A stretch of DNA of 64,000 bases from Octopus bimaculoides. Lineage: Eukaryota. The stretch covers positions 42,794,182-42,858,181 of the forward strand of contig NC_068985.1 in the NCBI RefSeq assembly GCF_001194135.2, read 5' to 3'. Both the position numbers and the translations under genes were made by a program. A model generated the notes under the pieces. That model saw nothing but the letters and a program-made list of their open reading frames with translations, had not been told where the DNA came from and searched no databases. This document shows, piece after piece, positions 11,412 through 59,161 of the stretch. Positions within the stretch are counted from its first letter, which is position 1. Each line of letters begins with the position of its first letter.

Positions 11412-14400
11412 CTGACAAAAGAAGATTGTACAATAGAATTACCAAAAAATAAAATAAGTTTTTAAAAAGATGGGATTTTGAAGGATTGTAACATTCATAA
11501 CGGAAGTGAATGGTATAAATTTTGGTAAGAAATTCAATTAAAATAGACTATTTAAAAACTTTTAGAAACAAAGTAAAATGTTAATAAATAGGTCCTTTTA
11601 TCAGTTTGGTTTGTTAGGAAAATTCATTTGTATTTTTCCATTTATTTTAATCCTTTTTGTTTTTTTCTTGAATGAACATGAAAAATATTTTTATCGTATT
11701 TTGTGGTGCTCTATTCTTCCTCTACAACTTTTGACTAGGGCTAAACAACTATGATGCCAACCATTATCTATTCTGTCATTCATTCTACTATGTTGTTGAA
11801 CAATATGGACTGCTCTAACTTCGAGGTTCAACCATTATCATTAGGAAGGGGTTCCAGCAGTGAATAACTTTATCTAGATGTCTATAGATGTGTCTCACAT
11901 GTAAAAACTACCGAAGCCATGATGATATTTGTATTTTTTATTTTCATTGTATAGTCTGAAGAGAAAGGACAGCAGCCTTGCCCAGTTTTTAGGGTCTCCG
12001 AAACTGGTGGGAGCTTTAAATTGTCCCCAAACTGGGAATTTGGCCTGAACACAATGGAGCAAACCCTGCTAAAGGTAGCCTAGGACCAGGTGGTCGTGAC
12101 TTATAAAAACAGTAGAAATCATCACAAAAGAATAAACTCACCTGTAATAGCCAGCAACATTTTCTTGCGTGCTCCAAAAGTGGAGATACCCAGCATGCGT
12201 AAGTCATTGTCATTCATTGTTCTAAAAGTAGGAAGATCAATCTGAAAAATTAAAAGTTCTGGGTTAGAATTGGATTTTTCTCAGTCTGTGAGTATTTTAT
12301 CATTTTGTTATAAACTCACTTTAAGTTAACAACTAAAGACCAATAGCTAGATACTTTCCAATTATCAACAACCAATTTTTTTTATTTATGAAAAGATTAG
12401 TAAATTACACTCATGAGACAGGTGTTATAGTTGATCAGTAGACTTTCAAAATAACTATCATGATCTCATGGAGAAAAGTATCAGTAAAATTCTTCTGGTA
12501 AAGGACTCAGAACTGGGGGGCAAAAATGTAGAAAAAAAATTTAATGTTTTGAACAAAAAGTTCTTTCACCCTATTCCTTCTCCATGAGGTAGGCAGACTT
12601 TTGGAATAGCTATTACTATCATCTATTACACCCAGCTCACAAGTATAATAATTTACTAATCCTTCAGTAAATAAAAAATTGTCTGTTGATAATAGGAAAG
12701 TACCACCCTTTGATTATAGAGACAGAATGTAAGAGTCCATGATTGAGAATCCCAAGGAAATATTTTTAATACTGTTTTAAGGGTAGATGAAGATGTAAAA
12801 CCTAATGTCCTCTGTCCCTATGAGGAACAGTGATCCTAGATATTATTAGTTTTGTAAGACATTGTATCAGATACAAGTTGATTCAAGCTTAGCCTGTGTC
12901 ATGAACCAGGGATTAGCTCTGTTTCAAGGTCTATAAGTGAATGAGATTGCAACAATCCCACTGGAACAGGACACTAGTCAGTTGCAGAGTTAACTTCCCA
13001 GCTATTGCTGGAACTCATTTACTGTTGAGTGGCCTGGAGCAACATGAAATGAAGTGTTTTGCTCAATAACACTGCACAGCCTGATCTGGAAATTGAAACC
13101 ACAACCGTATGATTGAGAGTGCAACACCTAAACCACCAGGTCACATGCCTTCAATGATATCAACAGAAGAATGTAAAGTCAGTTGAATGCAACATTAGAA
13201 TGGTGTCTCTCTACTGGCATTGCACTGTCCTTAATAAATATAATTCTTCATGAATCTGTCTATTTAACAGAAACAGCACTTGTGTGGAAGAACAGCTCAC
13301 ATCATTAAGTTGATTCGATACTGTATAATTTTTAGTGTTGATCATGAATACTCCTTATAGTATTCCAACAGAGTAAGAAGAAACGATTTCAAAGTACCTT
13401 CCATTGATTCTCATCATAATAGTGGTTTCCATTGGCATCACAAAGCTAATAATAATAAATCAGACAACACGGAGAGATTTAGAGATTCAAGTCAGAAATA
13501 TTATCTCTTAAGACTGACATTTTGATTCATTTCATATTCATCAGAGGAGTTTTTTAAAGCATAAACTAGAAATAGTAATGTATCAGTGTGGTTGAGTAGA
13601 CCTATATTAACATAGATAAGCCAGTAATGTATGTTGAGGCTTTACCCAGCAATGGCTTAGTAAAAAATTAATTGGCATGGAATATCCTTGTTATTGGCAG
13701 AGTAAACATTATAAAGGAACCTCTAAATGTTTGCTCTATGATCTTAAAAATAGGAAGGGTAATATTATGATAATGTATTCCTCGAGAGCCCTAAAAAGAT
13801 TGTGTGGTCATACCTGGATTGTCTTTAATCATAGGTCTACTTGATCAAATATGACCGAAGACTAAACAACGACTCCAGTTGTGGTATACGTCTGAGGAAG
13901 ACGTGTTACTTGCTTAGTGCCAGGTCATCTGTCACAGCAGATGTATGAGCAAAGACATTTGTTACACATTATAGATTGTATTATTCCTGAATGGTCGTTT
14001 GATGTAATTTCTTGCAGATTAAACTACAAATTGCTGTTACTCATCATCATCATCATCGTTTAACGTCCGCTTTCCATGCTAGCATCGGTTGGACGATTTG
14101 ACTGAGGACTGGTGGACCAGGTGGCTACAATCTGATTTGGCAGAGTTTCTAAAGCTGGATGCCCTTCCTAACACCAACCACTCCGAGTGTGTAGTGGGTG
14201 CTGGAAATTTCAATACAGATCAGAGATTTGAGTTAAGCCTCTGTTTATTTCCATTGCCATTTCATATCTTAATAAAAAGACACAGACTAACAAGCTAATT
14301 GGAAATCATCTACACGAAAATAGTTTTAGCATTATTACCTCCACCTTAGCGGCGGTATTGTTTTCAGTTGTGTTTGTTTGTTAGTCCATGAACAAGATAT

Positions 14401-17400
14401 CTCAAGAACTGCTGGATGGATTCTGATGAAACTTTCAGGGATGTTTGGCCTCATGACTGGCATGAACTAATTAGATTTTGGGATCGATCCAGTACTGGAC
14501 AAGGATTCTGGATTATTTTTACTTAATTTTTGAGAGCGGTTGGGTTCATTTTTAGTATTCTCATTTGTAAGAGCAGTTGAGTTTATTTCAGATATTCTCA
14601 TTTTAAAAATCATCTCTGGCTAATCGTTGAGAGGACTTTGGTGTTACCTTGGCAGAGGTTTGTGCTCTCTGAGTGTTCTTGTTAATATTTAGAATTAATA
14701 GTGGTGAACTGGCAGAATCATTAGTACACCGGACAAAATGCTTAGCTGCATTTTATCCATCTTTATGTTCTGAGTTCAAGTTCTGCTGAAGTTGACTTTG
14801 CCTTTTATCCTTTCAGGGTCAATAAAATAAGTACCAGTTGAATATTGGGGTCAGTGTAATTGACTTAATCCCTTAACCTGAAATTGATGTGTATCAAAAT
14901 TTGAAACCAATATTTAGAATTAAATGGTAATATATTATCAACATATTTCTTTTCACTAAAAAGTGTTCTCTTTTAAACTGAGGGAAGAATTTGTATCTAT
15001 GTCTGTACACAGGCAGAAGACCCAACATTGTAAATAATAGGGAGTTGTTGGGATGGATATTGAAATAATGGTTTTGATGTATTTATTTGTTCTCTCAAAC
15101 TGTGTAATGTTAGGAGAGAGAGAGAACCCCCACTTCCGTTGATATGTTCTTTGTTAATCTTCAAGTCCATTATTTATTACCAAACTGCATTAGAAACTTA
15201 GTTTTTCGTTACCTCTTGCTGCTGAAAAATATCTGTATATTTGCCAAGTCCTAATTTGCTGAATAACTCAGCCAGATCTGTTTCAGATGACCAAGCCAAT
15301 ACCTTTGTGGGGAGAGTTGCACTATCTGCATGGTTGCTATTACTTAGACCAAATTCAACTGAAAAATAAACATGGAAAAGAAATTAAGTGAATATATACA
15401 AAAACACGTGCAGACACACACACATGTATATACATTTATTTTTTATGCTAGCATGAATTAGATAAGTATATTATTTAAGGCATTGCTTTATAGCTGGATG
15501 CTCTTTCTGTCACTAAAGTTTACCTGCGTCTCAAGTAAGGGATCTCGAGTAAGTTATCAAAGGAGCAAAGTTGATGGACAGCTTGTTGACAATAGCATCA
15601 ACCCATAACTGAGGGATATTCAAAGATGGGCAAATGTAAACAAATGCACAGACAAACACACATGCTTGTACATTCTCTCTCTCTCTCTCACACACACATT
15701 TGTTTCTGTTTACCAAATCCACTAACAAGGCTTTGGTCAGCCCAAAGCTCTTAGTAGTATGCACTTGTCTAAGATTCTGTACAATAGGACTGAACCCTGA
15801 AAATGACTTTTCTTATCAAGAACTGCAAAGCTGAAAACATTTTCGAGCTCTCTGTTTTCATCTTTAATTTTAACAACATCCACAAGGAGTTTTAATGATG
15901 GATAAACTTTTCACTGCATCATTCATTATGTGTTACAGCAAAGAGTGTGACGTGAAGGACCAGGTTAGCAAAAATAAGTATTCTACTAGAACTACATAAA
16001 AGTGAATTTCACCTTATGCATTATAGACATAATGAATTACTAAAATTCTACTGTCTTAAACTATGTGAGTGTGTGTGCGCACACTGCACACATAGAAATC
16101 TTTATGTATGTATATTATGGTCAATAAAAACGAGGGAAGATTATAGGAGGAATACTTTGCTACTGTTAGCCTATGTCAACATGGGAAAATAAACATTAAA
16201 ATGATGAGAATAATGGGTTGTATTTATCAACCATTTTTGCTTGCATAATTAATACAACTACAATAATAGGATGAAGTAAAATTAAAACTTACATCTCTTT
16301 TTAGGACTGGAATATTCCCACAATGGTGTGGGCATTTGAGTATTTAAAGCTTTTGTAGAATCCTTCCAAGGATCGCGATTAACTTCTGGAAAATCTGTCA
16401 CATTTTGCTATGAAAAGAAAGAAAGCTTCTGTCTAGTCTAATCATACGAAGAGATGGAACAAATTTTGATAAGTTTAAACCACAAAATAAATTGTTTTTT
16501 AATTAATTGATTGAACATTTGAAAACATTTTTTTTTTCAAGTCTGGAAAAGAAAAATAAACAAAAAATATGAAATGTTGCAATTTCTTTTTATTGTACCA
16601 TTATTTGTAGATTATGTCAATATACCAGTTATCATGATTTCTAAAATGGGGTCTGGTTATTCTAATAGAATGTAAGGCATGCTGAAGGTGATAGTTATAT
16701 CTTGTCTGGCTACTCCTACATAGTAAAGTAGGTTTATCTACCTTATTTCACCCACCCTCAGCTACAATGAGCCCTCAACTTCTGATAGGAGCACAATCAT
16801 GACATACAATAAGTCTTGAACTTTTAAAAATCTGGCAAAGGTCCAGTCGTCTCTAGAGAGGACTGGACTTTGCCAGACGGTTTTTCCAGAAAGAGACAGA
16901 AACAAACAGTTGGGTGGGTGGGGGTGAGGGGTTGGTAAAAACAATCCCAGTACTGAGCTGGTGCTTTATTGACCTGAAAGGAAGGAAGGAAGGAAGGGAA
17001 GAAGGAAAAATTTATCACACCAAATTTGAATTGAGAGTAGATGGAACTGGAGTAACTATCACAAGGTATTGTATCTGGATGCTCTAGCGACTCTGCCAGT
17101 TTACCACATATAATGACAATATATGACTAAATTCAGAATTAATACAATTTCTATTTAATCTTTCTTCATTTCTTTCATTGATTTCAGCCACTAAAATAGA
17201 GGCCATACTGAGCTGGTTACAAGGTTTTTAGTTGATTATACTGACACTAATACTTTTTCTGGCACTTAGTGGATCTGATAAGGGACAAAAAATCTAGTTA
17301 ACATTAGTATAAAGGGACATGACTTTATACGGAACTAAACTGTATTTTTGTTCACTGCATTCCCTTCATCTCTGACTGTCTACCAAATTTCACTTATAAG

Positions 17401-26100: not shown

Positions 26101-29100
26101 GGTTCTAAGCATAAAGATGTTGTAAGTAGAATAATACAGAACATGGAGGAGACAAAAAAAAAAATCTATATAAAAAATATAGTCTGTGAGAATACAGAGG
26201 ACTAAAGAACTCACTTGGTGGAGGTGCAACCCATTGGTTTAACTGACAGTTTGAACTTGGGCTGTTGGCTGGACTGAGCATAGTTGATAAATTACTGTGG
26301 CCATTCATCACATAACCTTCAGAGAAATAATTCAAAACTGATTAAATCTAACGAAAAGTAGAATATATCAAACATCATATTAATATAATTACAGTGATAC
26401 TTTCAAATATTGTCGATCAGTATATGACAGGTGTAAGCCTAATTTCATTAAATCTTTGCATTATGTTGTTCATGAAAATGACCCTTCCTAAATTAAAATT
26501 CATTATTTTAACTCTTTAGCATTTGAACTGACCATATCTTCCCAAAATATTTCACTTGTTTAATGTTCAAATTAGCCAGATCCAGCCTTCAACGTACCCT
26601 ACAATGTCATTCTAAAAATGACAATCACAACATCAAAATCTCCAACCTTATGAGATCAGATCTGGCCTTTCACACCTACCCTACAATGTAATTCTAAAAA
26701 GAACAATCACATCATCAAAATTTCAAAGCTTATAAGATTAGATCTGGCCTTTCACACCTGCTCTACAATGTCATTCTCAAAATGACAATCACAACATCAG
26801 AATCTCCAAGCTATGAGATAATGCATGCTGAATTCAAAACAATATGACTTAAATAAGAATTACATTTTACAGAGTTATCTAAACAAATAAGAATTACATT
26901 TTACAGATTAATCTAAACAAAATCCTTATTTTTAAACAATCAGCATTTAATATTTAGAAGAGAAAAATCCAAAGTTGTACTTACCTAGAGAAGACAATCC
27001 AAGCATATTAGTATTTGGATTGTTAATGGTACCATTAGTGCTAGCACTGCAAGGTGGTGGTAGACTGTTGTTATTGGTTTCTTTATCCAAACCCAACAAC
27101 TGAATTCGAGCATCATACATGTTAGCAGCATTCCTCTCAACACTTTTCACAATGACAGACTGCTCATGTAAAGAAATGTATAAAAAGATGGAATTACAGG
27201 ACAGTTATTCTCGTTTGGTTTCATTTTTAATAGACGCTTCATCACAACCAACAACTTCCTTGAAATACCACTTTCCTTGAAGCTAGACTTAGAGAGTTTA
27301 CTTGACTAATGCAGGGATATATTTTCTGTACTCAAACATGATGAAAATGACATGATTAAACAGACACCATGGTAATCGGTGTTGGTCTGCATTAGTAAGA
27401 CTTGAACCATTTAGTAAAATTGATAAAAAGTGTACAGTTAACTTGCTGTGAGGAGTGGAAAACCAAATGTTTTGGACAGAAGCCTTCTTCAAGGACAGGC
27501 TGATAGGAGAGAAATTATGGAGAGACAGCAGAGTTTTGCAACCAATTTTGCTGTCTTTCATTAACTTCTCTCTTGTCAACTTTTACCCAAAGAAGGACTC
27601 TGTCCAAAATGTTGGATTCCTCACTCCCCATAGCAAGTTCACTCTTTTTATCGAATTTACTTTCTAATAACACACATCCAAGCATACTGTAGCATATTGT
27701 AGATGCTGATACCTCTCTAGCACAATAGGAAGAATAGCTCACAGCAGTAAGCAGTGGGAGTACTATGTGAATTAGGAGTGCTTTGTTAGTTTTCAATGGG
27801 AGTATCTTTGAGAAGAATATGTTCTAACAGGCATGGAGAGTATCTTTGAGTATGTTCTAACAGGCTGACAAATTGAGACAGACCCCCACTAACAAGTACC
27901 TCACCCTTACACTATGCAAAAAAATTTGCTTTCGTTGAGCCATCGAAGCAGCCTCTGTGCTATCGCTCCCCTGATAGAAATAACAGCCAAATTTTCAAAT
28001 CAAATTAAATACCAAAGCACATTAAATATTGTAGTTCTAGGTAAACAATGCCTGAACAAAAGATGAGTGTGATCATAGCTGGTATGCCTTTTTTTTTTTT
28101 GTCACAGGACTGCTGTGCTGGAACAAAACTTCAACATGTTTTAAATTAGACAAAATCAGGATTTGAAGACGTCTCCAACCCCTTGCTAAGATATATAAAA
28201 CAAAAGGAAGGATTTACCTTGCTGGGTTGTTTTGGTTTTGACTTGATACTGATAAATACATCCAGTTGCTCCATCAACATGCTAATTCTAGCTGTAATAC
28301 ACAAAATTTATTGTTATTTAATGAATATCTCCCATTAAACCAGATAAAACAATGAATACTGGAGGGCATGACAATTAAAATGTGTCAAAGATGAAGATTG
28401 GCCAGAAACACATACATCACCTTACACTCACCTCATAAAAAGATATTGATAATTATTGATGTTTACCAAACATAAATATATATAGAGATAATTATTTTAG
28501 TCTAATAACTTAAAATTAAGACGTCAATACGTCAATACATCACTGTAAGAGGTTAGAAATTCAGACCTATTTGACAAAATATGCTTTATGATTATCATCA
28601 TCATTTAGCATCCATCTTCTATGCTGGCATGGGTTGGACAGTTCAACAGAATCCAATAACCTGGAGGAATGAGTCAAGCTTTACAGAGTGCACTGGGAGT
28701 TTTTTCAAGGTACTGGCTCTTGTGAGGTCACCATGCAGCTTGCAAGACTAAGATTCCTTTTAATTGAGTAAAGAGGGAGGCACCTTTATGCTAGGCAATG
28801 AGAGAACGGACCAAAAGAAAATGGGGATTTTTGCTGCAGAGGAGCTACATGGCTAATAACAATTTAGAAGAGAGGAGGAAGTGGCCAAGGTGGAGCTGGA
28901 AAGAGATAAAACGGTGGTGATGATGAGTCAGGGGGGGGGGGGCTCAAGATATAAGGTGAGTAGAAGTGGGGATCAAAGAACAAGGAGTGTGAGTGAGTAG
29001 AGATTGAAAGAATATATGGGGAGAGTGAGAAATTGTTAGGTATGGGGAATGGGTGAGGGGATGAATATAATGAGTGGAACAAGTTTTGAGGGATGATAAT

Positions 29101-32100
29101 TATATGTTGTATGGAAGAGTAGATGATGACTGTAGTGATTCTCAACCAGGGTTCATATGGCCCTTATAGGTCCATATAACATTTTGTTGTTAAAATTTAT
29201 CAGCGCAGTAAATTGGTTACACTTCTAAAATGCACAAAATATCTTAATAATTTTCTTTATACAATTCCTAATGATATTTAATTATAAAACTATAATAGGA
29301 TATTTTAAACATCAAATTACTACAGGGGTCCAGTTGAGTGAAATAAGAATCAAAGAGGGTCCATAGGTAGAAAATGGTTGAGAACCACTGCTGTAGAGAT
29401 TAACATTCCTAGAAGTTAGGCAGGTGCCAACCATTTATCTGAATTCCCCCTGCAACATCTCTAGTAGTAGCCAGACTGGTGTCAACTGTCTATTTGAGAT
29501 CCTTCATTAAAAACCTCCAGTAGCCAGGCTGGTGCCAATAATTTGTCTGTGGATCCTAAAAGGGCAGGTAAGGAATAATCTCATGCACTCAGAAGAGAAA
29601 GTTTTTTACAGAAATATCTGTTAACTTACCAGGTTCAATCTCAATGTCTTCTTTGATATCAAACATCAATACAAGGGGCAAACATCCCTAAAAAGAAAGT
29701 AATGAAGCTTATTAAGAAATTATTAATAATTTAGCAGTCAAATATATTCTAGAAACATGTTACAATTTCAGGAGAGAATTCAGGGTGGCAGTTAGAATAC
29801 AACATACAGGATGACAGTCATAACACAACATACAGGGTGGTAGTTGCAATACAGCCTACAAGATAACAATCACCATACAACATACTGGATGACGGTCTCC
29901 ACAGAGCACTCAGGACAACAGTCACAGCACAACATAATGGATGACAGTCACAGCATCATATATTAGATGGCAGTCACAATACAAAATACAGGATGACAAC
30001 ACAACATATTTGAGACTGACTAAAATCCTAATAGCTTACATCACGAGTAGATATGTGAAGGTAATTTATTTTATAAGGAAGGAAGATAAAGGAAAAGGTC
30101 AGTGTTTATAACCTTTGACTTTTGTCCCAACCTGATCAAATGAATGTGGTTGATGTTCATTCTGAACATCTGCAGGAAAACATGGGAGGGAGAGGTGGGA
30201 GACGATAGAAGAGATGGGGGTGGGTTTGTCAGACATGGTATCATCAAATCAGATGAGTGTGCACACACACACACACACACACACACACAACATCACAAAG
30301 ATCTTGACTAGGACTGCTCTCCCTGCAACTCCCTAACTACCCTCAAATATCTTGTTAATGCCTATTTAATATTCAAACTAAACATTAACATCCCCTACTT
30401 TTGCCCACGTGAGTGTCCTCCATGTTCAGATATTATGTCAGTTGATGCAAACAGTTGATTGGCCTCCAGTTTCCATAGTGATTACAGATATTAAACACAC
30501 CTGCAACCAGCTAGTTTATTGTGGGGGACCTAACTATAGCAGGTTGAAGCAGGTAGAATTAATAACTATATATAAGAGTTTAACATACACACACTAATAA
30601 AATACACATACACACACATATATATATAAATATATATATTAGAACTTAATAAAATATAATCATAGACATATATATATATATATATATATANNNNNNNNNN
30701 NNNNNNNNNNNNNNNNNNNNNNNNNNNNNNNNNNNNNNNNNNNNNNNNNNNNNNNNNNNNNNNNNNNNNNNNNNNNNNNNNNNNNNNNNNNNNNNNNNNN
30801 NNNNNNNNNNNNNNNNNNNNNNNNNNNNNNNNNNNNNNNNNNNNNNNNNNNNNNNNNNNNNNNNNNNNNNNNNNNNNNNNNNNNNNNNNNNNNNNNNTAT
30901 ATATATATATATATTAATATATATATATACACACACAAGAGGTAAATAAAATATATATATAACTATATGCATTTGTTACCAATGTTCTACAAGAGCTTAT
31001 TAAAACACACACATTTGCCTCCAATGTTGCACTCAGTTTGTATCACAAATTCTTTTTGTCTCACTCAAGCCATTGTACTTGGAAAATAAGTTTATTGCCA
31101 TTGTTGTTCAATGGAAATAAAATATTTTCTGGGTCTTTATAGACTTGACTTTACCATGGAAGACACTTAGAAGCACAGATTACACTGTGGCTAATGATTA
31201 TGTCAACCAATCATATTGTTACACAAATACAATTAGACATGTTCTGTAAAGACATATAAAGTTTTACTATAATTTCTACATTGTGGCATTCAACTTGAAC
31301 TTGTGATATTGTATTCCAACAGGAGTGAATTAGCAACAGCATGCTTGACTGTTGAATATCATCACACAACACACACACACACAAAATAGCACAAAGGTAC
31401 CTTTATCTACATACCAATTTTCATAAAGATTTCAATACCTAAATGTTATAAAGACTGGCTCAGACAGAAACAATGGAGTGAGGAAACTATACTAGTACAT
31501 AAAAAACAATATGGCTGTCCTATAGCAGCTGAAGACAAAGGAAGTAAATTGTTATTATCAACATAGATTCAGGCATGGTCGTGGAGTTAAGAAGATTGCT
31601 TTGTAATCAAATGGTTCTGGGTTCAGTTTCACTCTGTGGGACCCTAGGCAAGTGTCTTCTACTCTTGGCTGATCACTACCTCATAAGTGAATTTGGTAGA
31701 TATGGGGAAGCCTATTATAAATGCATGTGCGCGCGCGCGTGTGTGTGTGTAAATGCATGTATGTATGTGTGTGTGTGTCTGTGTTTGCCCTCTCCTCCAC
31801 TACTTGACTTAGATTTCCATAAGCTAGCAGTTCAGCAAAAGAAACCAATACAACAATAGCAGAGTATTGGGGTTGATTTGTTCAACTAAAACCCTTCAAA
31901 GAGGTACCCCAGTATGACCACTGTCCAATGACTGAAACAAGTAAAAGGTAAAGGATAATTCCATTACTAGAAAGAAAAAGAAAACTAAAAGCAACTGTCA
32001 ATATTAATTTCAAAAATCGTCTGTCTTTATATTCTGAGTTCAAATTCTGCCAAGGTCAACTCTGCCTTTCATCCTTTTGGATCGATAAATTAAGCACCAG

Positions 32101-34457
32101 TTGCGTACTGGGGGGNNNNNNNNNNNNNNNNNNNNNNNNNNNNNNNNNNNNNNNNNNNNNNNNNNNNNNNNNNNNNNNNNNNNNNNNNNNNNNNNNNNNN
32201 NNNNAGGGTGGGTGGGTGATCTTATCAACTGGCCCCTCCCACAAAATTTCGAGAGCCTTATGCCTAGAGTAGAAAAGAATATTAATTTCAAAATATTCTT
32301 TTTATTCTGTTTCCAAGTTGGTATGTATCACATTGGTCTAAAGAATTTGATGGCCATCTGTATTCATAATTATTTTACACATGAAAAGCTTGAGTGGTAC
32401 CTTGAAATCACTTGTGGCATTTGGTACTTAGGTATTCTTAAGTATGTTAATTAAGAAACAATATGACTTGACTTTTGATACCAAACTGCCTTAGACTATC
32501 CCTGGCTCTATAATAAAACCTTCTTGTTTTAAAATGATATATAATAAAACTGGCCATCAAAATTTCATAATAATTTTTGTTCCAAACAGCAGCTTAATAA
32601 TGACAAAATTATTTTACTAAATTTGTCATTATTTTCAAAATTATCTGAAACAAAAGCAATGTATTTCAACAGATGTGTGGAAACAAAAAGGTTAAATGAA
32701 AGACTTAAAGAGGAAGGCCAGAGTCATTCAGCATTTAGATATTGCTTGTTTCATTGACTTTTAGATATTTAATTAGAAAAAAATATTCTATATACAAATT
32801 AACAAAAATATTAATTTTTACTTTGAGGAAATCTATTCTTCATGTATATACTTTCAATGTCCAGTAATTTAGCAAATGAGTTACCAAATCTCTAAGATTA
32901 TTCGTTTCGAATTTTGGCACAAGGCCAGCAATTTTGAGGGAGGTGGGTAGTTGATTACATTGACCCCAGTGCTGAACTGATACTTAATTTATTGACCCTG
33001 AAAGAATGAAAGGCAAAGTTGATCCTGGCAGAAGTTGAACTTAGAACATAAAGATGGACAAAATTCTGCTAAGCATTTTGTCTGGCACAGTAACGATTCT
33101 GCCAGCTTGCTGCCTTCCATATTGTCTAAGATTATTTACAAAAACCAATTACAGACACCTGGTTATTAACTGTTTGGAAAATGGTTAACTATTAAGATCT
33201 GTTTTGAGTTTGTGTGCAAAGTTCAGAGAAAAATCGTCCACAAAAAAGAAAAGTAAACAAATAATTCAAAAAGATGGTAAAGGAAGAGTAGGCATTCATA
33301 GAAAATACTGAAGTAACATAGCATTTCCTACACTTGGAAATATTTTACATGTGTTCATAGAACACTATAAATAGCAATCAGGGTTGTTGTGTCATAGTAA
33401 CCATTTCACAAGAAACTTTAGGGCTAATCTTTTATGCAATGCTCTAAGACTTGCATAAATATATTATTTTTAATAAAAGTACTTTCACCAAAATACTTCT
33501 TCAACCAATATCTGCAACAGCTACTTTCAGGAATTACATTTATTATTTCTAACACAGCCTATATTTAGGAACTCAGCATGGATTCTTACATGGTAGCAAG
33601 GTTTTAGTATTCTCAACGTGCAATAGATATGCACAGTTTTATACATATTTACTTTGTAAAGAAAACGAAATAATTAATTTTTTGTTTCGGAATTAAGATA
33701 GTATCAAATTTAATTGAGTGTCTTAAATTTCTTGTTCCTATATTTTTTAGTATGGCAATTTTTTCCATACAGAAAGAAGTCTTTAATTTTTTATTCAAGT
33801 AATACCAGATAGGTCTCAAATCAAAGAACATCTCCTGGGTGACAATAATGGACAAAATTTAGTGAATTTGGAAGGGTTAGTCTATGTTTTTTAACATATG
33901 TAATGAATAACTTTGCAAATTTCTGACTAATATTACACACTATTTTAACAATATGAGGTGTCAAATGTTTACATAAGAAAGTTCTGGAAACTATAATTAT
34001 ATTTTTAGTTGTAAAAGTGAGATTATTATCCTTATTATCCAGGCAGCAAGCTGGCAGAATTGTTAATACACCAGACAAAATACTTAATGGCATTTCTTCT
34101 GGCACTTTACATTCTGAGTTCAAATTCTGCTGAGGCTGACTTTGCCTTTCATCCTTTTGGGTTGATAAAATAAGTACCAGTCAAGTACTGGAGTCAACGT
34201 AGTTGATTCCCTCCTCCAAAATTGCTGGCCTTGTGTCAATAATAAAAGGAATTATTATTATTCAATTTCTACTGAGGTCTGCTTTGCCTTTCATCCTTTT
34301 GGGATGGTGATGAAATAAGTACCAGTTGAGTACTGGGGTTGTAATATCCCCTTCCCTCAAAATCTGATATTTAACAGTTTCTTTTGGCAAACTGCTAAGA
34401 GTTAGGAGATGTAAACAAACCAGCATTGGTTGTCAAATGGTGTGTGTGTACAGGGGT

Positions 34458-34495
<38 letters not shown>

Positions 34496-37400
34496 AGATT
34501 TCCACAGTTTTCATCTATCAAATTCACTCACAAGGCATTGGTCAGCCCAGGGCTATAACAGAAGACACTTGCCCAAGGTGAGCATGCAGTGGGACTGAAA
34601 CTGAAACCATGTGGTTGAGAAAATATCCTCTTAACCACACAGCCATGTCTTTGCCTGTATTAAGTATATTATCAGCCCACTTCACTAATAGAGATTATAA
34701 ACTGTCCAACATGTATTCCTCAACTGCCTTCTCACAACAACCCTATTAATTAGGAGATTCTCAATATTCAGTCTATCTTAATTTATTTACACACTCCTTA
34801 GTATAATCTGCTAGAAATGGCAGCAAAATCTCCTTCAAAAATCCCATCATACACTTCCTATCATAGAAAAACAACACGAATATGCTAAAAGAAATAAGCG
34901 AGATGGTTATGGTTGGAATGCTTTTACATAGATTTGTTTGATCCCAGCTGGCCCAGGATTAAATAATCACATTCATTCTATATCACAGACATAACTTTTA
35001 TCATCATGGTAGCCTCCTAAGTTTGAGTAAAATGGTTCTGCAATGTCTTACTGAACAACCTGCATCGATAATTTGTTTATAGTGATGAAGTGATCACTAT
35101 AAACAATGTGCTGTACATTAGCTCACTCCCTCCATCAAATTGACATTGTATGAATAGGAGCATGGTGTGCCATACATCAGATATTGAAATGATTGCACAG
35201 CAATGAAAGACGAAGTGTTTTGTTCAAAACCACAACACATTGCCTGGTCTGGGAATCGAACCCACGATATCATGTTTGTGAGTGTAACACCCAAACCACA
35301 GACATTACTACTTACTGTTTAAATCTCCTTTAATTTCTACATACAGACCTTACCCCTATATAACACATTTAAAACCTACAAACCCTTGTCATAAATAAGG
35401 CAGTATGTGTGTGTGTGTGTGATCAAAATGCTTTCTACAACGGAGACATGATAACTTGATATTGTTAAGAAATGTCACAACACCACTATTTCACATGTTA
35501 GCTTTAATCCTTGGTATTATATCAGATGTACAGAATATCATGGCACAAAATATGGTAAATGGTTTATTAGAAAATGTCACACTGTCTCAGACTTCAAAAA
35601 CGAAAACTAATCCCCCTACCTCACTTTTTTTTTAATATCATTATCTCAGAATATTATTTTCTGGTCTGGAATTAAAATTTTCTTAATACTTTACAGAACT
35701 GAAAAGTTCTAAAACAACAAAAAAAAAAAATTAAATACAGCTCTTCTAGTTGTTGTTGCTTAACTCTAGTTCAATTTTAATCAAGGGCATTCCAGCCATG
35801 GCCATCCCATCTTTTATTCATAGTGCATCTAAAACTACATTATTTAATGTTTTCTTCATTGTTGTAGTTGTTATTTGGTCCTTGGTTTACACAGACCAAA
35901 TAAATCCATGATCAAAGATACCCTGCCATAACCATAGGACTGCATTATCTAATGTGTCCCACCATTTTTTTTTAAAGCTGATGTAGAGTGATTTAAGGGA
36001 AATTTAAATACTATTTCTAGCAAATCAAATAACCACATGGAAATCCATTTATTATTTCATTTGGAAATAATGAAAATACAGAGAAAGAAATAATAAACAA
36101 TAGAGACGGTATGTAAATCAAAACTCACAATTAGTTGTTGTCGGGCTTGATAGACACTTTCAATGGGTCCAGTTATGAAAACAGTCCCCTTCCGTAAAGG
36201 GCTTACATTATTGGGATCAGGAAAGTAAACACTGGCCCCTGTCCGTTGCATTATCTGTTTAATATTCACATCTCCACGACCAATCATGAATAAATGGTGC
36301 TGAGGAGCAATTTCCAACTGCATACTGACAGTTAAACTTACCTAAAGGAGAAATATAGAGACATAATAGAACAATCATCATTATCATCATCAACACTGCT
36401 ATCATCACCATCAACACCACCACCACAATACTGTCACCATCATCATCCCCTCCACCAGTACTATCATTACCCTTACCACCATGGGAATAAATAGTACTAA
36501 TCCATGATACCAGTAGTGATGTTAATGATATATTTAGTACAGGAAATATTCATAAGTTAATTAGTAGTAGTTCTGTAGTGAGGAAAAAAATATCAATTAA
36601 TGATTACTATCATTTTAAAGATTTTGGCAGCCATAGTTGACAATAATTGTCATGTTTCAGTGTTATTCTGATTCCGTCAGTGAAACAGATTTCACTGTAC
36701 TTGCTAAAAAGCTGTGATGGAAGAATCACTAAGATGGTACATTGGTAGATGTAAGAATATAGATTTGTTTAGAGATGATTAGGCACTGAACAATTCGTGA
36801 TTATTAAACTGACATATTAACCATCATGGTTATAGATCCAAAATAACATTAACCATCACAGCCACACTGCCAACATACCATTAATTATTACAACCACGCC
36901 TCCAACAAGACATTAATCATCGTTGCCACAGCTCCAAAATGAAATATTAACCATCATGGTCACACCTCCGACATGATCTATTAACCATCACAGCCATACA
37001 CCAAAAATGACATAACCATTAAACTCACATCTCCAATATGATGCATTAACCATCATGGCCACACCTACAACATGACATAGTAACTGTCATACTTAGCTCT
37101 CCTACATGACACATTAACCATCAAAGTTAGACCTCCAACATGACATATTAACCATCATACCTGCACCTTCAAGATGATACAAAAGCTATTATACTCACAC
37201 CTCCAACATTATTCAACAAATGTTCCATGAGACGAGCTGTTGCTTCTTTCACCATTTTGGCATTATAGACAGAACCTCGCACTGTTATGATGGTCATGTA
37301 TGACCGAGGTTTCTGCTTAAAGCTTATCGTTACATTGTAAACCTTCTGTAAATGCACCAGGTGAGAGGAGGCTGGGTCTGCTAATGAAGGTGATAATGAC

Positions 37401-39846
37401 ATTTCAAATATGAATACCAGAGGGAGCAAGTCCTGCAATAAAAAAAAAAGGAAAATACAGAGATTTAAGGTAAATTTAAGGCACAAGGCTTCAACAAGTG
37501 AAGAAAGATAAACCCCAGTACACAACTGGTACTTTATCTTATTGTCCCTGGTAGGATGAAAAACAAAATCAACTTTAGCAGGATTTAAAATAAGATAGTA
37601 AGTAGCCGTAAATAAATATTAAAAAGATAAATACATATAAAACATAATTTTTTTTAATGTAAAGAAGGTTTAAAGTGCAGAGTTTACTTCCATATTTATA
37701 GCATTAAAATATTTCTTTCTCAATGGTAGTCTTCTATTCCAAGTGACATTCTCAGATGGATAATCTGGAGTCTCTAATGTTAGGTGAATTGATATGTTTA
37801 GTAAAATGATAACACTACCCAAAAACACAATAGTAGTTTGGGAGTTAAGAGCCATAACAATGGTACCCAATAAACAGAAACCTTTGATTTTTTTTTATTT
37901 CTGTTAAAAGATGGAGATGATAGATTATTTCTGTTCATTTAAATGATACATGACATCATTCCTTTTAAAGATTAAGGTGACATCCACCTATATAAAAGTT
38001 AACAGGTGACATTCATCTATATAAAGGTGACAGGTGACATTTGTCCATATAAAAGTGAGAGGTGACATTTGTCCATACAAAGGTGACATCTGTCCATACA
38101 AAGGTGGCATCTGTCCCTACAAAGGTGACAGGTGGCATCTGTCCCTACAAAGGTGACAGGTGGCATCTGTCTATACAAAGGTGACAGAAGGCATCTGTCC
38201 ATACAGAGGTGACAGGTGACATCTGTCCATACAAAGGTGACAAGTGGCATCTGTCCCTACAAAGGTGACAGGTGGCATCTGTCCCTACAAAGGTGACAGG
38301 TGGCATCTGTCCCTACAAAGGTGACAGGTGGCATCTGTCCATACAAAGGTGACAGGTGGTATCTGTCTATACAAAGGTGACAGGTGGCATCTGTCCCTAC
38401 AAAGGTGACAGGTGGCATCTATCTCTACAAAGGTGACAGGTGGCATCTGTCCATAGAAAGGTGACAGGTGGCATCTGTCTATACAAAGGTGACAGAAGGC
38501 ATCTGTCCATACAGAGGTGACAGGTGACATCTGTCCATACAAAGGTGACAAGTGGCATCTGTCCCTACAAAGGTGACAGGTGGCATCTGTCCCTACAAAG
38601 GTGACAGGTGGCATCTGTCCATACAAAGGCGACAGGTGGCATCTGTCCATACAAAGGTGACATGGGTCTACATAAAGGTAACAGGTGACAACTGGCCACA
38701 TAAAAGTGACAGGTGGGAATTGTCCATATAAATTTATAGGCTAAAGAGACCCATCTATCCAGTAAAAAATGAGGCCAAGGACTGAATCAATTAACCAGTT
38801 AACTCATGAAGAATGACAAAAAGTTAATTATAGTTAATTAATTAGAGTAAATTAATTACAGTAGACAATATCATGTAACATTACCCGAATTTGGATACGA
38901 GCACTTTCCACTCCAGATGGTTGGCCAGCAATAGAAACCTGAAGGATAAATAATTAAAAAGTAATTAATGGATTAAATATATTGTAATGAGTTTGCATTG
39001 AGGCAGGTGTATATGCAATGTGTGCATGTGAGTGTATATGTGTGATACATACACACAGATATATATGTGTGTGCGTATAAATATATATATATATTCACAC
39101 ACACGCACACAGACATACATATAGAGGGAGAAGGAAAGGGAATGAGAGGGAGAGAGGGAACATGTGAGTAGATGTGAGAGAAATAGAGACAAGACATGTG
39201 TCAGTGTATGTAAGCATGGGTGTACGGAATTTCCTTGGAACTATTTGTCATTGGAAGTAATATTTGCCATGTAAATTCAAAGAACAAAGATTCCTTTTAA
39301 AGTTTCAAAATGAAAATAGACATGTTTGTGAGTTACGATTAAAGAGTACAGATGGAAGTGATGCTTCAATGAGGCTCACTATCAGATACAGCATATCTAC
39401 CTATCAAGAACTTGGAAACACTGGACTTTGTAGTTCACCCAGATTAATCTAGCGAACTGAAATATGACTTATAAATAATCAGAAAATGGAGAGGCAAGAG
39501 TTATTCTACTAGCAATACATTGAATAAAAGTCATCCATGTTTTAACCCTTTGCCTGTCCAAAGCATTTTCATAAGTTTATCCTAAACATCCATATTTGTT
39601 TCCAGACTTTTAATTAGCCCTAGCTTCATATGCTCCGAGTAATAAAAAGCTTTCCTTTCATAAGTCCTAACCTACTCTTGTGGTTGGAAATATTTTTTCT
39701 CCGTGTTTTTCTCCTTATTATTTCTGTTGAAGAGCGTAGCTCGAAACATTAAAGACTTTCTCTATTCCCGAGCGTTAAACTAATACATCCTTTTGTTGTT
39801 TACACCACCTGTCCTCGTCTGTTGTTGTTTTTTTTCGTAAATTCTC

Positions 39847-39907
<61 letters not shown>

Positions 39908-42900
39908 TATATACATATATAGATATATATATATATTCACATATACATATACATACATATATAGATATATGTTTGTGTGTGCGTGTGTGTGTGCTTATTA
40001 AACATATGCATGTAAATTTACATGCTTTTGTTTTATAAACACATTGTGCATGTGTATGTATGTGTTTGTGCATAAATGCTAAGAGTAACATCAAATATAG
40101 CAGATATGACTGGAGGTTTATTTTTGCTTAGCACAGCTAAAAATAGAAAGTTTTCACATCACCATAGGTTGGTAAAAAAATATTTTCGTTGCCATAGAAA
40201 CAGTAAACTTCAGTCAACAGTTGAGTTTAGAAATATTATTAATAGCTTCATACAAGGCTATTTGGGAAATGATGGTACACGAACACATACACACACATCA
40301 CACACAGTCACAACCACACACAATCATACAATCTACAAGGCAGATCTTTCAAAGTCATCTGAAATTCATTAAGGACCTTACCTGTTGTGTAGACAGAAAT
40401 TGTTGTGTAATATAGACAAGTTAGAAACAGCTGAGGAATAATCTTGCCAAATAAATTATTTTATCATTTTATTAGAGTAGTGTTAGTTATCTTTGGACCG
40501 ACATATGTCAATGAATTACTTAACCAAATATTTGGAGAAATCCACAATTCTATCACAGAATACATTGTGTTCACAGTTTAGTTCCAGACTATGCTGGAAT
40601 GAATGGCAAACCACAGAGACCCATTAATGAAGATGCACCATATTTTAATGTAGTTTGCAATTATGACAATTTAAGTGGAGAATCTAATTCACCCAACGTT
40701 TGGGTACATGTAGTGGAGACCACTCTGTTGTAAGCATATAAACTGTCTCTAGTTTTAATAAAACTCAGTAGCTTGATATACAACACAGCTTCCTATAGTA
40801 CCATACCTTACATAATGCCACTGTTTGTCAGAGAGTACAAATGGAAGTGATGCTTCCATGAAGCTCACTATCAGATACATCATATCTACCTGTTGAGGAC
40901 TTGGAAACACTGGACTTTGTAGTTCACCCAGATTAATTTAGTGAACTAAAATATGACTTATAAATAATCAGAAAATGGAGAGGCAAGAGTTATTCTACTA
41001 GCAATACAGTGAATAAAAGTCATCCATGTTTTAACCCTTTGCCTGTCCAAAGCATTTTCATAAGTTTATCCTAAACATCCATATTTGTTTCCAGACTTTT
41101 AATTAGCCCTAGCTTCATATGCTCTGAGTAATAAAAAGCTTTCCTTTCATAAGTCCCAACTTACTCTTGTGGTTGGAAAAAATTGGGTTGTGTATCATAT
41201 ATGATGTATGGACACCAGGGAAATATGCCTTGTGTATCCCATGTGATACACAGGACAAGCAAAGGGTAAATATAATATCAGTGGACTACATAAAATACAA
41301 TATATCATCAAACACAGAACAGAGCTATAAATATTTACAACTGTAGCAAATATAGTAAAACAGAAAAAGAAATTTCAAATTAAGTTAGATTCTCTTTGGA
41401 ACATTAATATAAAACAGTGCAATTGGAATGATAATCAAGTATGATCATAGAGAATGTGAAAAATTAAAGACAACTCACCTGGTTGCTTTTTTCTTGGACA
41501 TTATTGCCACGATTAGAATCTGGGAAATGAATATGGCAGCCTGTTCCTTGCATGACTTTCTTGATGTTGTTACCACCTTTTCCAATAACATGAGAGTGGT
41601 CAGTGTGAGAGACATCCATTTTCAGTGTAACCCGATTACCCTGGAGTGTGAAATGATAAACAATATAATTCAGTTACCCCTTAAACCCCTTCTGTTGAAA
41701 TACACTACCTTTGTTTCCATTAATTTTGAAAATAATGAAGGATTTAAGTAAATAACTATTATTAAGCTGGTGTTTGAAACAAATTAACATGAAATTTTGA
41801 TGGAAGATTTTAATTTAGATCAATTTAAAATTGGAAGTTTGTGTCATAGAACCAGAAGTTGTCTCAACAATTTGATATCAAAAGGTGAAATGGTGAAGGC
41901 ACATGGTTTGGGCTCACAATCATGAGGTAGTGAGTTCGATTCCTGGACAGGGCTGTGTGGTGTGTTCTTGAGCAAGACACTTTATTTCATGTTGCTCCAG
42001 TTCACTCAGCTGTAGAAATGAGTTGCGACATCACTGGTGCCAAGTTGTATTGGCCTTTGCCTTTCCCTTGGATAACATTGGTGGCATTGAGAAAGGAGGC
42101 TGGGATGCATGGATGACTGTTGGTCTTCCATAGACAACCTTCCCCAGACTTGTGCCTCAGAGGGGAACTTTCTAGGGGCAATCCCATGATCATTCATGAC
42201 CAAGGGGGGTCTAAACCCTAATGTGAAATGAAAAAAAGTTTCTTTTTTTATGTGCTGGGTCAGAAGGAAGGGACAGTACGTATGGTCTTTTAAGGCCTTC
42301 CTAGACTAGTGAGATTGGTATCATTAATATTTCTCTTGAATTTTGTAAACCAACACCTACAAGAAAGCTATAAGCAAGAAGGAAATTCCAGAGGGCTAAT
42401 GTTGTGGAAAGGAAGAACTAGGCAGAGTAATTAGTGTGCAGGGCTAGGAAAGGATTTGGACACAAAGGTGATGAGAGGAGGAGAGGCAAGTGGGATGAGA
42501 ATGCCTGAGTGGAGGTGGCATGGGCTAAGTCAACTCTGAGGAGTCTAGGCTATTATAGTAGAAGTTGAAAAGGCAGAGAGAAGAAATATAACAGCCTATG
42601 GCACATAAGCTGGAGTATGTTTGTGAACGACTTAATATCAATCAGTGGACATTGGCCCAGGATGTCTATGAGCAGCAGCATTGTCCCAGACATGAGAGCA
42701 ATACTCCATTGTAAGCTGCAACTGAGCTTTGTAGAGTATTCATTAATTATTGGATGCTAGAGTAGCTTCTGGTCCTGAAGAGAAGGACCAGTAATTAGGA
42801 CGTAGTCCTAGATTTGTTAAGAATGCACTTTTACAAGGTGAGACCGTCAGTGATAGTGAAATCCAAAAGTTGGATAGATTTTGAGGGCTGTAGCTGAGTG

Positions 42901-49429: not shown

Positions 49430-49930
49430 TTTGTCAATGGTAAATCTTTCATCAATACTTTTAGTCAGTGGTACTTTAGCCAATGGTGACTCTTTAGTCA
49501 AAATACCTTTAGTCAATGGTAAATCTTTTGTCAATACCTTTTAGTCAGTAATACTTTAGGCAATGNNNNNNNNNNTGGTGACTCTTTAGTCAAAATACCT
49601 TTAGTCAATGGTAAATCTTTTGTCAATACCTTTTAGTCAGTAATACTTTAGGCAATGGTAAATCTTTAGCCAATGATAAGTTTTTGGTTTCTGATTGAAA
49701 TCAGTTAATGTAAGCATGGTTGTGCAGTTAAAAAGTTACTGCTGCAATTGTATGGTGTCAGGTTCAATACCACAGTATGTGGCACCTTAGGTAAGGGCTT
49801 CCTACCATAATCTCATGTCATCCAATGTTGTTTGAGTGGAATCTTTTGTCAATACCTTTTAGTCAATGATATCTTTAATCAATACCTTTTAGTTAGAAAA
49901 ATACTTTAGCCAATGGTAAATTTTTAGTGA
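49430..49930 (+). repeat. degenerate minisatellite (core cttttagtcaatggta), interrupted by a gap and a SINE fragment
   Basis: recurrent tttagtcaat. Confidence 0.8.
49566..49575. other. 10-N assembly gap with duplicated flanks
   Basis: N run; an ~80-bp sequence is repeated on both sides. Confidence 1.
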
Positions 49931-58536: not shown

Positions 58537-59161
58537 NNNNNNNNNNNNNNNNNNNNNNNNNNNNNNNNNNNNNNNNNNNNNNNNNNNNNNNNNNNNNNNN
58601 NNNNNNNNNNNNNNNNNNNNNNNNNNNNNNNNNNNNNNNNNNNNNNNNNNNNNNNNNNNNNNNNNNNNNNNNNNNNNNNNNNNNNNNNNNNNNNNNNNNN
58701 NNNNNNNNNNNNNNNNNNNNNNNNNNNNNNNNNNNNNNNNNNNNNNNNNNNNNNNNNNNNNNNNNNNNNNNNNNNNNNNNNNNNNNNNNNNNNNNNNNNN
58801 NNNNNNNNNNNNNNNNNNNNNNNNNNNNNNNNNNNNNNNNNNNNNNNNNNNNNNNNNNNNNNNNNNNNNNNNNNNNNNNNNNNNNNNNNNNNNNNNNNNN
58901 NNNNNNNNNNNNNNNNNNNNNNNNNNNNNNNNNNNNNNNNNNNNNNNNNNNNNNNNNNNNNNNNNNNNNNNNNNNNNNNNNNNNNNNNNNNNNNNNNNNN
59001 NNNNNNNNNNNNNNNNNNNNNNNNNNNNNNNNNNNNNNNNNNNNNNNNNNNNNNNNNNNNNNNNNNNNNNNNNNNNNNNNNNNNNNNNNNNNNNNNNNNN
59101 NNNNNNNNNNNNNNNNNNNNNNNNNNNNNNNNNNNNNNNNNNNNNNNNNNNNNNNNNNNNN
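58537..59161. other. assembly gap flanked by (GT)n
   Basis: N run. Confidence 1.

What the first reader, a model, noticed from the sequence alone, without database searches (positions are those of the whole stretch)
36270..36281. BICC1 KH3 loop is genomically GRGD; one A-to-I edit would restore the canonical GxxG (GRGG)
Seen: the exon reads ATT GGT CGT GGA GAT GTG AAT ATT AAA (I-G-R-G-D-V-N-I-K), while KH2 in the same gene has canonical [10 protein letters not shown]. Established: KH domains bind RNA through a GxxG loop, vertebrate BICC1 KH3 has GRNG, acidic substitutions in the loop impair binding, and coleoid cephalopods recode many codons by ADAR editing. Inference: either KH3 has lost canonical binding here, or editing of the A at 36271 (GAT->GGT) restores Gly in a regulated way and acts as an RNA-level switch. 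Caveat: the 5' neighbour is G, which ADARs disfavour. Only a weak candidate complementary stretch is visible (36741-36760, three 6-nt blocks).
Basis: partly seen in the sequence, partly recalled or inferred. Interest (0 to 1): 0.75.

Follow-up and report, generated by a model that had tools for sequence, protein, structure and literature searches.

The report
Octopus BICC1 KH3 loop: fixed GRGD
The octopus gene for the RNA-binding protein BICC1 really does encode Asp where nearly all other animals have the last glycine of an RNA-binding loop, but the change is hard-wired in every octopus, argonaut and cuttlefish-type sequence found, and nothing found here suggests RNA editing reverses it.

Summary
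The minus-strand exon at 36341-36129 is the KH3 domain of BICC1. It reads I-G-R-G-D-V-N-I-K, with GAT at 36272-36270. The window matches Octopus bimaculoides BICC1 (XP_052824322.1): 100% in the KH3 exon and in five other exon matches, 71-98% in the rest.

GRGD is not an assembly error or a polymorphism. It occurs in every coleoid sequence retrieved:
- O. bimaculoides, O. sinensis, O. vulgaris and Argonauta hians;
- the cuttlefish Acanthosepion pharaonis;
- one further decapod genomic exon;
- two decapod-type mRNAs.

The Asp codon varies at its third base (GAT or GAC). Other molluscs, and 124 of 132 other full-length BICC1 proteins, have Gly. A second coleoid-specific change, His to Tyr in strand beta2, accompanies it.

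The editing-switch idea finds no support:
- the neighbours are unfavourable (5' G, 3' U);
- the proposed complementary stretch pairs more weakly than the best site in shuffled intron;
- no intron sequence is conserved with a decapod;
- spliced mRNA contigs from RNA-seq runs (12 read at the DNA level, 17 counted) all carry the unedited codon.

Minority editing, and editing in octopus itself, could not be tested.

The most likely reading is an old, selectively maintained coleoid variant that makes KH3 a non-canonical, KH-like module. KH2 (GKGG) remains the canonical RNA binder.

The parts
36129..36341 (-). BICC1 KH3 exon (71 codons, phase 0 at both ends)
   Evidence: KH_1, E 2e-13. 100% identical to O. 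bimaculoides BICC1 residues 304-374. AG/GT splice sites confirmed. The AF2 model keeps the beta-alpha-alpha-beta-beta-alpha order, and Foldseek matches type I KH domains at TM about 0.7.
36270..36281 (-). GXXG-equivalent loop, GGT CGT GGA GAT = G-R-G-D
   Evidence: It lies between helix 14-18 and helix 27-34 of the model.
36270..36272 (-). Asp codon GAT replacing the near-universal fourth Gly; the A is at 36271
   Evidence: Asp in 20 of 20 coleoid sequences and in none of 135 others, which are 131 Gly plus C, S and M. The codon is GAT or GAC across coleoid lineages.
36225..36227 (-). Tyr codon TAC, the second coleoid-specific substitution (His to Tyr in strand beta2, IHFP to VYFP)
   Evidence: Tyr in 20 of 20 coleoids; His in 124 of 135 others and Tyr in none.
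36741..36760 (-).
   Evidence: duplex -17.5 kcal/mol, against -26.3 for the best real site and a mean of -24.6 for the best site in shuffled intron.
36081..36109 (-). Downstream-intron segment that pairs with exon 36274-36243 in some predicted folds; also at chance level
   Evidence: duplex -17.4 kcal/mol, against a mean best of -23.1 in shuffled intron. Not conserved in the decapod locus.
41572..41583 (-). KH2 loop GKGG (canonical) within the KH2 exon (about 41473-41640)
   Evidence: GKGG in 19 of 19 coleoid and 123 of 132 other full-length proteins; in six more the anchor pattern found no motif.
37199..37432 (-). KHL1 exon immediately upstream of KH3 (BICC1 residues about 226-303)
28218..29687 (-). 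Two KHL2 exons (29687-29630 and 28291-28218) downstream of KH3
   Evidence: (PF22985 KH_BICC1, E 5e-11).
12143..15356 (-). SAM-domain exons (about 15356-15210 and 12250-12143); the last coding exon is at 11406-11266
   Evidence: (SAM_1, E 1.5e-13).

Best explanation
This is the KH3 exon of Octopus bimaculoides BICC1. Its GRGD loop is a genomically fixed trait shared by all coleoid cephalopods sampled, not a local anomaly. On the lineage leading to the last common ancestor of octopuses and cuttlefish or squid, a G-to-A change turned the fourth glycine of the GXXG loop (GGN) into Asp (GAY). A second change, His to Tyr, arose in the neighbouring beta2 strand. Both have been kept since, while synonymous positions around them turned over, so the Asp (or at least its middle A) is under purifying selection. 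The rest of KH3 remains highly conserved and is predicted to keep the type I KH fold. The inferred consequence is as follows. Asp sits at the start of helix alpha2, where the canonical loop offers backbone amides to the RNA phosphates. KH3 therefore probably no longer clamps RNA in the canonical way. It would then act like the gene's own KH-like domains, as a structural or non-canonical surface of the multi-KH platform. Canonical RNA binding would be carried by KH2, whose GKGG is intact. Shown here: the sequence, its taxonomic distribution, the codon pattern, the predicted fold and the unedited state of assembled decapod mRNAs. Inferred: the effect on RNA binding.
For: Identity with O. bimaculoides XP_052824322.1. 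GRGD in O. sinensis, O. vulgaris, Argonauta hians and Acanthosepion pharaonis, in decapod-type Logan mRNAs P0176, P0305 and P0177, and in the decapod genomic exon P0308. Codons are GAT, GAC, GAC and GAT in four lineages, with flanking synonymous changes. The fourth residue is Gly in 124 of 132 non-coleoid full-length BICC1 proteins, and in the chiton, gastropods, bivalves, a brachiopod, an annelid, a nemertean, amphioxus and vertebrates that were named. Only two residues are coleoid-specific: Gly to Asp and His to Tyr. The KH fold is retained. In Xenopus Bicc1 only the KH2 GXXG is needed for Cripto-1 RNA binding, although all three KH domains are needed (Dowdle 2019 as reported in 10.1101/2022.07.22.501140 and PMC9491823). 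The fourth Gly has been lost independently in animals without extensive recoding: crab GRNN, mite GRAE, loaches GRNC, Tetraodon GRNS, herring GRHS, ark clam GRGM. KH1 has no GXXG in any mollusc examined.
Against: No binding assay exists for a GXXD loop. The published loss-of-binding mutant is GDDG (positions 2 and 3; PMC3413153), not position 4. Strict conservation of the A is also what a conserved recoding site would show (PMC8382921), so conservation alone does not exclude editing. No octopus RNA and no Nautilus sequence could be examined. The coleoid sample is about eight species.
Confidence: 0.75

Rival explanations
1. Restorative A-to-I recoding. The Asp codon is edited by ADAR (GAU to GIU = Gly) at a meaningful level in some tissue or condition. 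Editing would then either have permitted the G-to-A substitution (the harm-permitting model) or serve as a switch between a binding and a non-binding KH3.
For: The ancestral state is Gly, and the change is exactly G-to-A. It arose on the lineage that evolved massive recoding, and the A is conserved in both coleoid superorders. Restorative sites are edited more often and more strongly than other sites (PMC6881472; PMC8382921). Ten Sepia-like BICC1 mRNA contigs differ only by A/G at four synonymous sites in ADAR-like context, so this mRNA may be an ADAR substrate elsewhere.
Against: The 5' G is the most disfavoured neighbour, and the 3' U is also disfavoured. The exon and its flanks are not unusually structured (z from +0.9 to -1.6). 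The mRNA folds have z from -1.2 to +2.0 and no partner shared between octopus and the decapods. Both candidate duplexes are weaker than the best duplex in shuffled introns. No intron is conserved between octopus and a decapod. All 12 spliced mRNA contigs whose DNA was read carry GAC. All three full-length mRNA-derived products, counted on 17 contigs, read GRGD, and no GRGG variant sits in their 90% clusters. The companion His-to-Tyr change (CAY to TAY) cannot be undone by editing. BICC1 was not found in the editing-site supplements that are held as text.
Confidence: 0.05
2. Assembly or sequencing error, or a private polymorphism, in this genome.
For: None beyond the rarity of a non-Gly residue at this position.
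Against: The same Asp occurs in independent genome annotations of four octopod species and one cuttlefish, in a further decapod genomic contig, and in RNA-seq assemblies from many runs.
Confidence: 0.01
3. Neutral drift. The KH3 loop is functionally dispensable, so Asp is a tolerated accident with no consequence and is under no selection itself.
For: The KH3 GXXG is dispensable for Cripto-1 RNA binding in Xenopus. Independent non-Gly variants exist in a crab, a mite, several fishes and a clam.
Against: Asp is invariant in all coleoid sequences, although the exon has diverged about 20% at the nucleotide level between octopus and decapods and the codon's third base has turned over. A free site would be expected to vary. 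Outside coleoids the Gly is kept in 124 of 132 full-length proteins, so the position is normally constrained.
Confidence: 0.15

Closest known systems
Vertebrate and Drosophila Bicaudal-C (BICC1) KH3 domain
   Same: Orthologous exon and domain within the same KH1-KH2-KHL1-KH3-KHL2-SAM architecture. Conservation around the loop is high ([20 protein letters not shown]). KH2 GKGG is identical.
   Different: Loop position 4 is Asp instead of Gly (GRNG in vertebrates, GRGG/GRSG/GRAG in other molluscs), and beta2 has Tyr instead of His. Both changes are fixed only in coleoids.
KH-like (KHL1, KHL2) domains of BICC1, and the KH domains of C. elegans GLD-3 (PDB 3N89)
   Same: KH folds in the same protein family that lack a GXXG signature and are regarded as structural or platform modules (PMC4561730, PMC9491823). 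For GLD-3 the statement rests on my own knowledge of Nakel et al. 2010; that paper is not held.
   Different: Coleoid KH3 still scores as a canonical KH_1 domain (50 bits) and differs from canonical KH3 by essentially two residues. It is not an anciently diverged KH-like domain.
GDDG loop mutants of KH domains (Hollingworth et al. 2012, PMC3413153)
   Same: Acidic residues introduced into the GXXG loop. In six test domains they abolish RNA binding without unfolding the domain.
   Different: Those mutants replace positions 2 and 3 and keep both glycines. Here the fourth glycine itself is replaced, naturally, and its effect has not been measured.
Restorative or harm-permitting A-to-I recoding sites of coleoids (Jiang and Zhang 2019; Shoshan et al. 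2021)
   Same: Ancestral G, derived genomic A, a nonsynonymous site, and an A conserved across coleoids.
   Different: No RNA-DNA difference has been shown. The neighbour context is unfavourable, there is no supporting dsRNA, and assembled decapod mRNAs are unedited.

Membership tests
Type I KH domain (Pfam PF00013) | Sequence profile match above the curated threshold | tested here: met
   KH_1 at 50.2 bits against a cut-off of 21.5, E 2.1e-13.
Type I KH domain (Pfam PF00013) | beta-alpha-alpha-beta-beta-alpha fold | tested here: met
   AF2 model with pLDDT 78 and elements E4-10, H14-18, H27-34, E37-39, E53-59, H60-70. Foldseek matches hnRNP K KH3, vigilin, PCBP and FUBP1 KH domains at TM 0.65-0.74. 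This is a prediction, not a solved structure.
Type I KH domain (Pfam PF00013) | GXXG loop between helices alpha1 and alpha2 | tested here: not met
   The loop reads GRGD; the fourth Gly is Asp. The domain is therefore a KH fold with a non-canonical loop, like a KH-like domain.
Bicaudal-C / BICC1 orthologue | KH2, KH-like (PF22985 KH_BICC1), KH3 and a C-terminal SAM, in that order on one strand | tested here: met
   The window exons match O. bimaculoides XP_052824322.1 residues 100-915: 100% in six exon matches including KH3, 71-98% in the others. Part of the shortfall is HSP extension into introns.
ADAR (A-to-I) recoding site, restorative type | A in genomic DNA and G in RNA of the same organism | not testable with these tools
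   No octopus RNA reads or transcripts covering KH3 were reachable. For decapods, 12 assembled mRNA contigs show the unedited A as the assembled base. This excludes majority editing in those runs only.
ADAR (A-to-I) recoding site, restorative type | The edited codon restores an ancestral amino acid | tested here: met
   Gly in other molluscs and in 124 of 132 non-coleoid full-length proteins; GAY edited to GGY gives Gly.
ADAR (A-to-I) recoding site, restorative type | The site lies in a double-stranded RNA structure | tested here: inconclusive
   Short imperfect helices are predicted, but their energies and z-scores are at shuffle level. No partner is shared between octopus and the decapods, and no intron is conserved. 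Structure prediction cannot exclude a real substrate.
ADAR (A-to-I) recoding site, restorative type | Favourable nearest neighbours (5' U or A, not G; 3' G) | tested here: not met
   The octopus context is G-A-U and the decapod context G-A-C or G-A-U. The preference is taken from PMC9989829.

The most novel reading that the evidence does not exclude
The Asp codon is a conserved, sub-majority restorative recoding site retained since the coleoid ancestor. In particular tissues or conditions, ADAR converts GRGD back to GRGG and so switches canonical RNA binding by BICC1 KH3 on. The strict conservation of the middle A over hundreds of millions of years would then reflect selection for an editable codon rather than for Asp.
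Probability: 0.04. Interest if true: 0.7.

Novelty: new variant of a known kind. Interest (0 to 1): 0.28.

Why it matters
BICC1 is a conserved translational repressor with roles in axis formation, left-right patterning and kidney disease. Which of its KH domains touch RNA is still debated. A natural, lineage-wide replacement of the KH3 loop glycine, kept under selection and paired with a second change in the neighbouring strand, is an evolutionary experiment. It agrees with the biochemical finding that only the KH2 GXXG is essential. It also offers a ready-made pair of variants (GRGD/Tyr against GRGG/His) for testing what KH3 contributes. For the RNA-editing field it is only an unproven candidate for a restorative site. 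Its value is that a single read pile-up at one coordinate would settle it.

Tried and rejected
1. The first homology search, with the 71-aa exon, returned only exon-sized ORFs from unnamed genomic contigs and no cephalopod. The tool appears to favour targets of the query's length class. Full-length BICC1 proteins appeared only through the representative library and a full-length query.
2. I first suspected that P0002/L001 (GQRG, sharing PNNVTPLRKG with coleoids) was Nautilus. It is 100% identical to the chiton Liolophura sinensis, so the idea was dropped. No Nautilus sequence was obtained.
3. The metagenome scan gave nine loci, none from a close relative, and all with Gly.
4. The window's own 88-aa ORF is not on record.
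5. Searches for BICC1 or bicaudal in the held supplements of PMC8382921, PMC4384741, PMC6881472 and PMC9068888 found nothing. These files are small or truncated, so this is weak evidence. Liscovitch-Brauer 2017 (tried as PMC5499236) and Nakel 2010 (PMC2957046) are not held.
6. SRA run numbers could not be traced to papers, so the tissues and exact species of the mRNA assemblies are unknown.
7. There is no second, alternative KH3-like exon in the window, so mutually exclusive exons are rejected.
8. Rfam found nothing in the window.
9. The inverted-repeat search found no arm covering 36271.
10. A third homology search with 176 aa around KH3, aimed at octopus transcript fragments, found none. It added only one decapod genomic exon.

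Full report
**What is in the sequence**

Read on the minus strand, 36341-36129 is a 213-nt exon. It is bounded by an AG acceptor and a GTGAGT donor. It encodes [71 protein letters not shown].

The loop codons GGT CGT GGA GAT occupy 36281-36270. The exon is a bona fide KH domain (Pfam KH_1, 50 bits, E 2e-13).

The surrounding exons identify the gene:
- KH2, with [10 protein letters not shown], lies at about 41.6 kb.
- The BICC1-specific KH-like domain (PF22985) lies at 29.7 and 28.3 kb.
- The SAM domain lies at 15.3 and 12.2 kb.

A tblastn of the O. bimaculoides protein XP_052824322.1 (P0290) lays residues 100-915 along the minus strand. The KH3 exon and five other exon matches are 100% identical; the rest range from 71 to 98%. 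Part of that shortfall comes from HSPs running into introns. The window is therefore the O. bimaculoides BICC1 locus or something indistinguishable from it. There is no second KH3-like exon that could serve as an alternative exon.

**How unusual the Asp is**

Exon-sized homologues from genomic contigs (30 sequences) and metagenome loci (9) all have Gly at the fourth loop position.

Among 132 non-coleoid full-length BICC1-like proteins, 124 have Gly. Named examples, are:
- chiton: GQRG
- abalone, limpet, Aplysia, Lymnaea, Pomacea: GRGG or GRAG
- scallops, mussels, clams, oysters: GRGG, GRSG or GRNG
- Lingula, Owenia, Lineus, amphioxus: GRGG
- Xenopus and mouse: GRNG

The position is not absolutely invariant. 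Isolated lineages have lost the Gly: the crab Scylla (GRNN), the mite Leptotrombidium (GRAE), Triplophysa loaches (GRNC), Tetraodon (GRNS), herring (GRHS) and the ark clam Tegillarca (GRGM). None of these is known for extensive recoding. By contrast, KH2 is GKGG in 123 of those 132 proteins; in six more the anchor pattern found no motif.

**The decisive comparative result**

The representative-library search returned Argonauta hians BICC1 with GRGD. A full-length search and cluster look-ups then gave the following, every one with GRGD:
- O. sinensis, O. vulgaris and all O. bimaculoides isoforms;
- the cuttlefish Acanthosepion pharaonis;
- three decapod-type proteins from Logan assemblies: P0176 (940 aa, on 13 contigs), P0305 (2 contigs) and P0177 (869 aa, 2 contigs; 92% identical to P0176).

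A further decapod genomic exon, P0308 on an ENA contig of 45 kb, has it too.

At the nucleotide level the codon is GAT in octopus, GAC in the Sepia-like mRNA, GAC in the second decapod mRNA and GAT in the decapod genomic contig. The neighbouring Gly and Arg codons also differ synonymously, and the exon is only about 80% identical between octopus and decapods.

So the Asp predates the split of Octopodiformes and Decapodiformes and has been kept since. That excludes an assembly error or a polymorphism. It also makes simple neutral drift unlikely.

A column-by-column comparison covered 20 coleoid and 135 other KH3 sequences. Exactly two residues are fixed in coleoids and essentially absent elsewhere: this Gly to Asp, and His to Tyr in strand beta2 (IHFP to VYFP; TAC at 36227-36225). 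The rest of the domain is as conserved as in other animals.

The predicted structure keeps the type I KH topology, with the loop between helices 14-18 and 27-34 and the Tyr at the end of strand 37-39.

**Testing the editing idea**

In its favour:
- The ancestral state is G.
- The derived A arose on the lineage that evolved massive recoding.
- The A is conserved across coleoids.

Against it:

1. Neighbour context. The 5' G is the most disfavoured neighbour across metazoans, and the 3' U is also disfavoured (PMC9989829).

2. RNA structure. The exon with 0-700 nt of flanks folds no better than dinucleotide shuffles (z from +0.9 to -1.6). A downstream-intron helix that appears in some folds (36274-36243 with 36081-36109) gives -17.4. 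The best site in shuffled introns averages -24.6 (upstream) and -23.1 (downstream).

3. Spliced mRNA. The octopus mRNA and two decapod mRNAs also fold unremarkably (z from -1.2 to +2.0). The predicted partner of the site is not shared between octopus and the decapods.

4. Intron conservation. Only the exon itself aligns between the octopus locus and the decapod genomic contig, so there is no conserved intronic partner.

5. RNA-level sequence. The Logan contigs encoding P0176 and P0177 are spliced mRNAs, with 2.6-2.8 kb open reading frames on 3-7 kb contigs. The ten P0176 contigs and two P0177 contigs that I read come from 12 different RNA-seq runs and all have GAC. The database counts 17 contigs for the three mRNA-derived products, all reading GRGD. 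No GRGG variant sits in their 90% clusters. This excludes majority editing in those runs. It does not exclude minority editing, and the tissues are unknown.

6. The companion change. His to Tyr is CAY to TAY, which A-to-I editing cannot reverse.

I could not reach any octopus RNA covering this exon. BICC1 was not found in the supplementary editing tables that are held as text.

**Most likely mechanism**

Published work on Xenopus and mouse Bicc1 shows that all three KH domains are needed but only the KH2 GXXG is required for binding Cripto-1 RNA. In mouse, the KH2 GKGG is likewise primary for Dand5 mRNA, with an additional requirement for the KH1 GXXG. Bicc1 also already contains two KH-like domains without GXXG. 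Acidic residues in the loop abolish RNA binding in model KH domains without unfolding them (PMC3413153), although those mutants change positions 2 and 3.

Taken together, coleoid KH3 is best read as a canonical KH domain converted, by two fixed substitutions near its RNA-binding loop, into a non-canonical KH-like module. KH2 would carry canonical RNA recognition. In molluscs the KH1 loop is not GXXG either, so KH2 is the only canonical loop in coleoid BICC1. The functional part of this reading is inference.

**Novelty and verdict**

The protein sequences are public and annotated. I found no paper pairing Bicc1 with cephalopods: among the 20 top-ranked papers of a loose search (any three of six terms), none contains 'Bicc1' or 'bicaudal'. 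The finding is a lineage-fixed variant of a known domain in a known gene. It is modestly interesting for BICC1 biology. As an editing candidate it is weak, but one read pile-up would resolve it. Whether Nautilus shares the change is unknown, and that would date the change relative to the rise of recoding.

Noticed in passing
window 36225-36227 (minus strand): A second coleoid-specific substitution in KH3: Tyr (TAC) where 124 of 135 other animals have His (IHFP to VYFP, strand beta2). Together with Gly to Asp, it is the only residue fixed in all 20 coleoid sequences and absent elsewhere.
   Followed up: partly
outside the window (BICC1 residues about 60-100; P0290, P0031, P0176): The KH1 loop is G(K/R)SG in vertebrates but is not GXXG in any mollusc examined (DEESAE, ADEGAE, TDESAE). 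Coleoids have ETCESAG-like sequence plus an insertion of about 19 aa. KH2 is therefore the only canonical GXXG domain in coleoid BICC1. Residues 1-99 of the protein give no hit in the window.
   Followed up: partly
L011-L020 (Sepia-like BICC1 mRNA contigs), CDS positions 2016, 2085, 2199, 2541: Ten mRNA contigs from ten RNA-seq runs encode the identical 940-aa protein. They differ only at four synonymous third-codon positions, and every difference is A/G, with 5' A or C and mostly 3' G. That context suits ADAR editing, but SNPs are not excluded.
   Followed up: partly
L001 1027-1496 compared with window 36341-29619: In the chiton Liolophura contig the exon after KH3 lies about 180 nt downstream. 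In octopus the same intron is about 6.4 kb.
   Followed up: no
window 30691-30897, 32116-32204, 49566-49575, 58537-59161: Runs of N (assembly gaps), two of them inside the intron between KH3 and the next exon. The low GC value at 58-60 kb is due to the largest gap.
   Followed up: yes
window 36270-36278 (minus strand): The substitution creates an Arg-Gly-Asp (RGD) tripeptide (GRGDV; GRGDM in Argonauta and decapods). BICC1 is cytoplasmic, so this is probably coincidental.
   Followed up: no
window, many places (for example about 62.6-63.0 kb, 0.1-0.7 kb and 47-56 kb): Repeated SINE-like segments and long (CA)n-type microsatellites appear in the six-frame translations as recurring peptides (for example ...[19 protein letters not shown]...) and THTHTH runs. 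They were not characterised.
   Followed up: no
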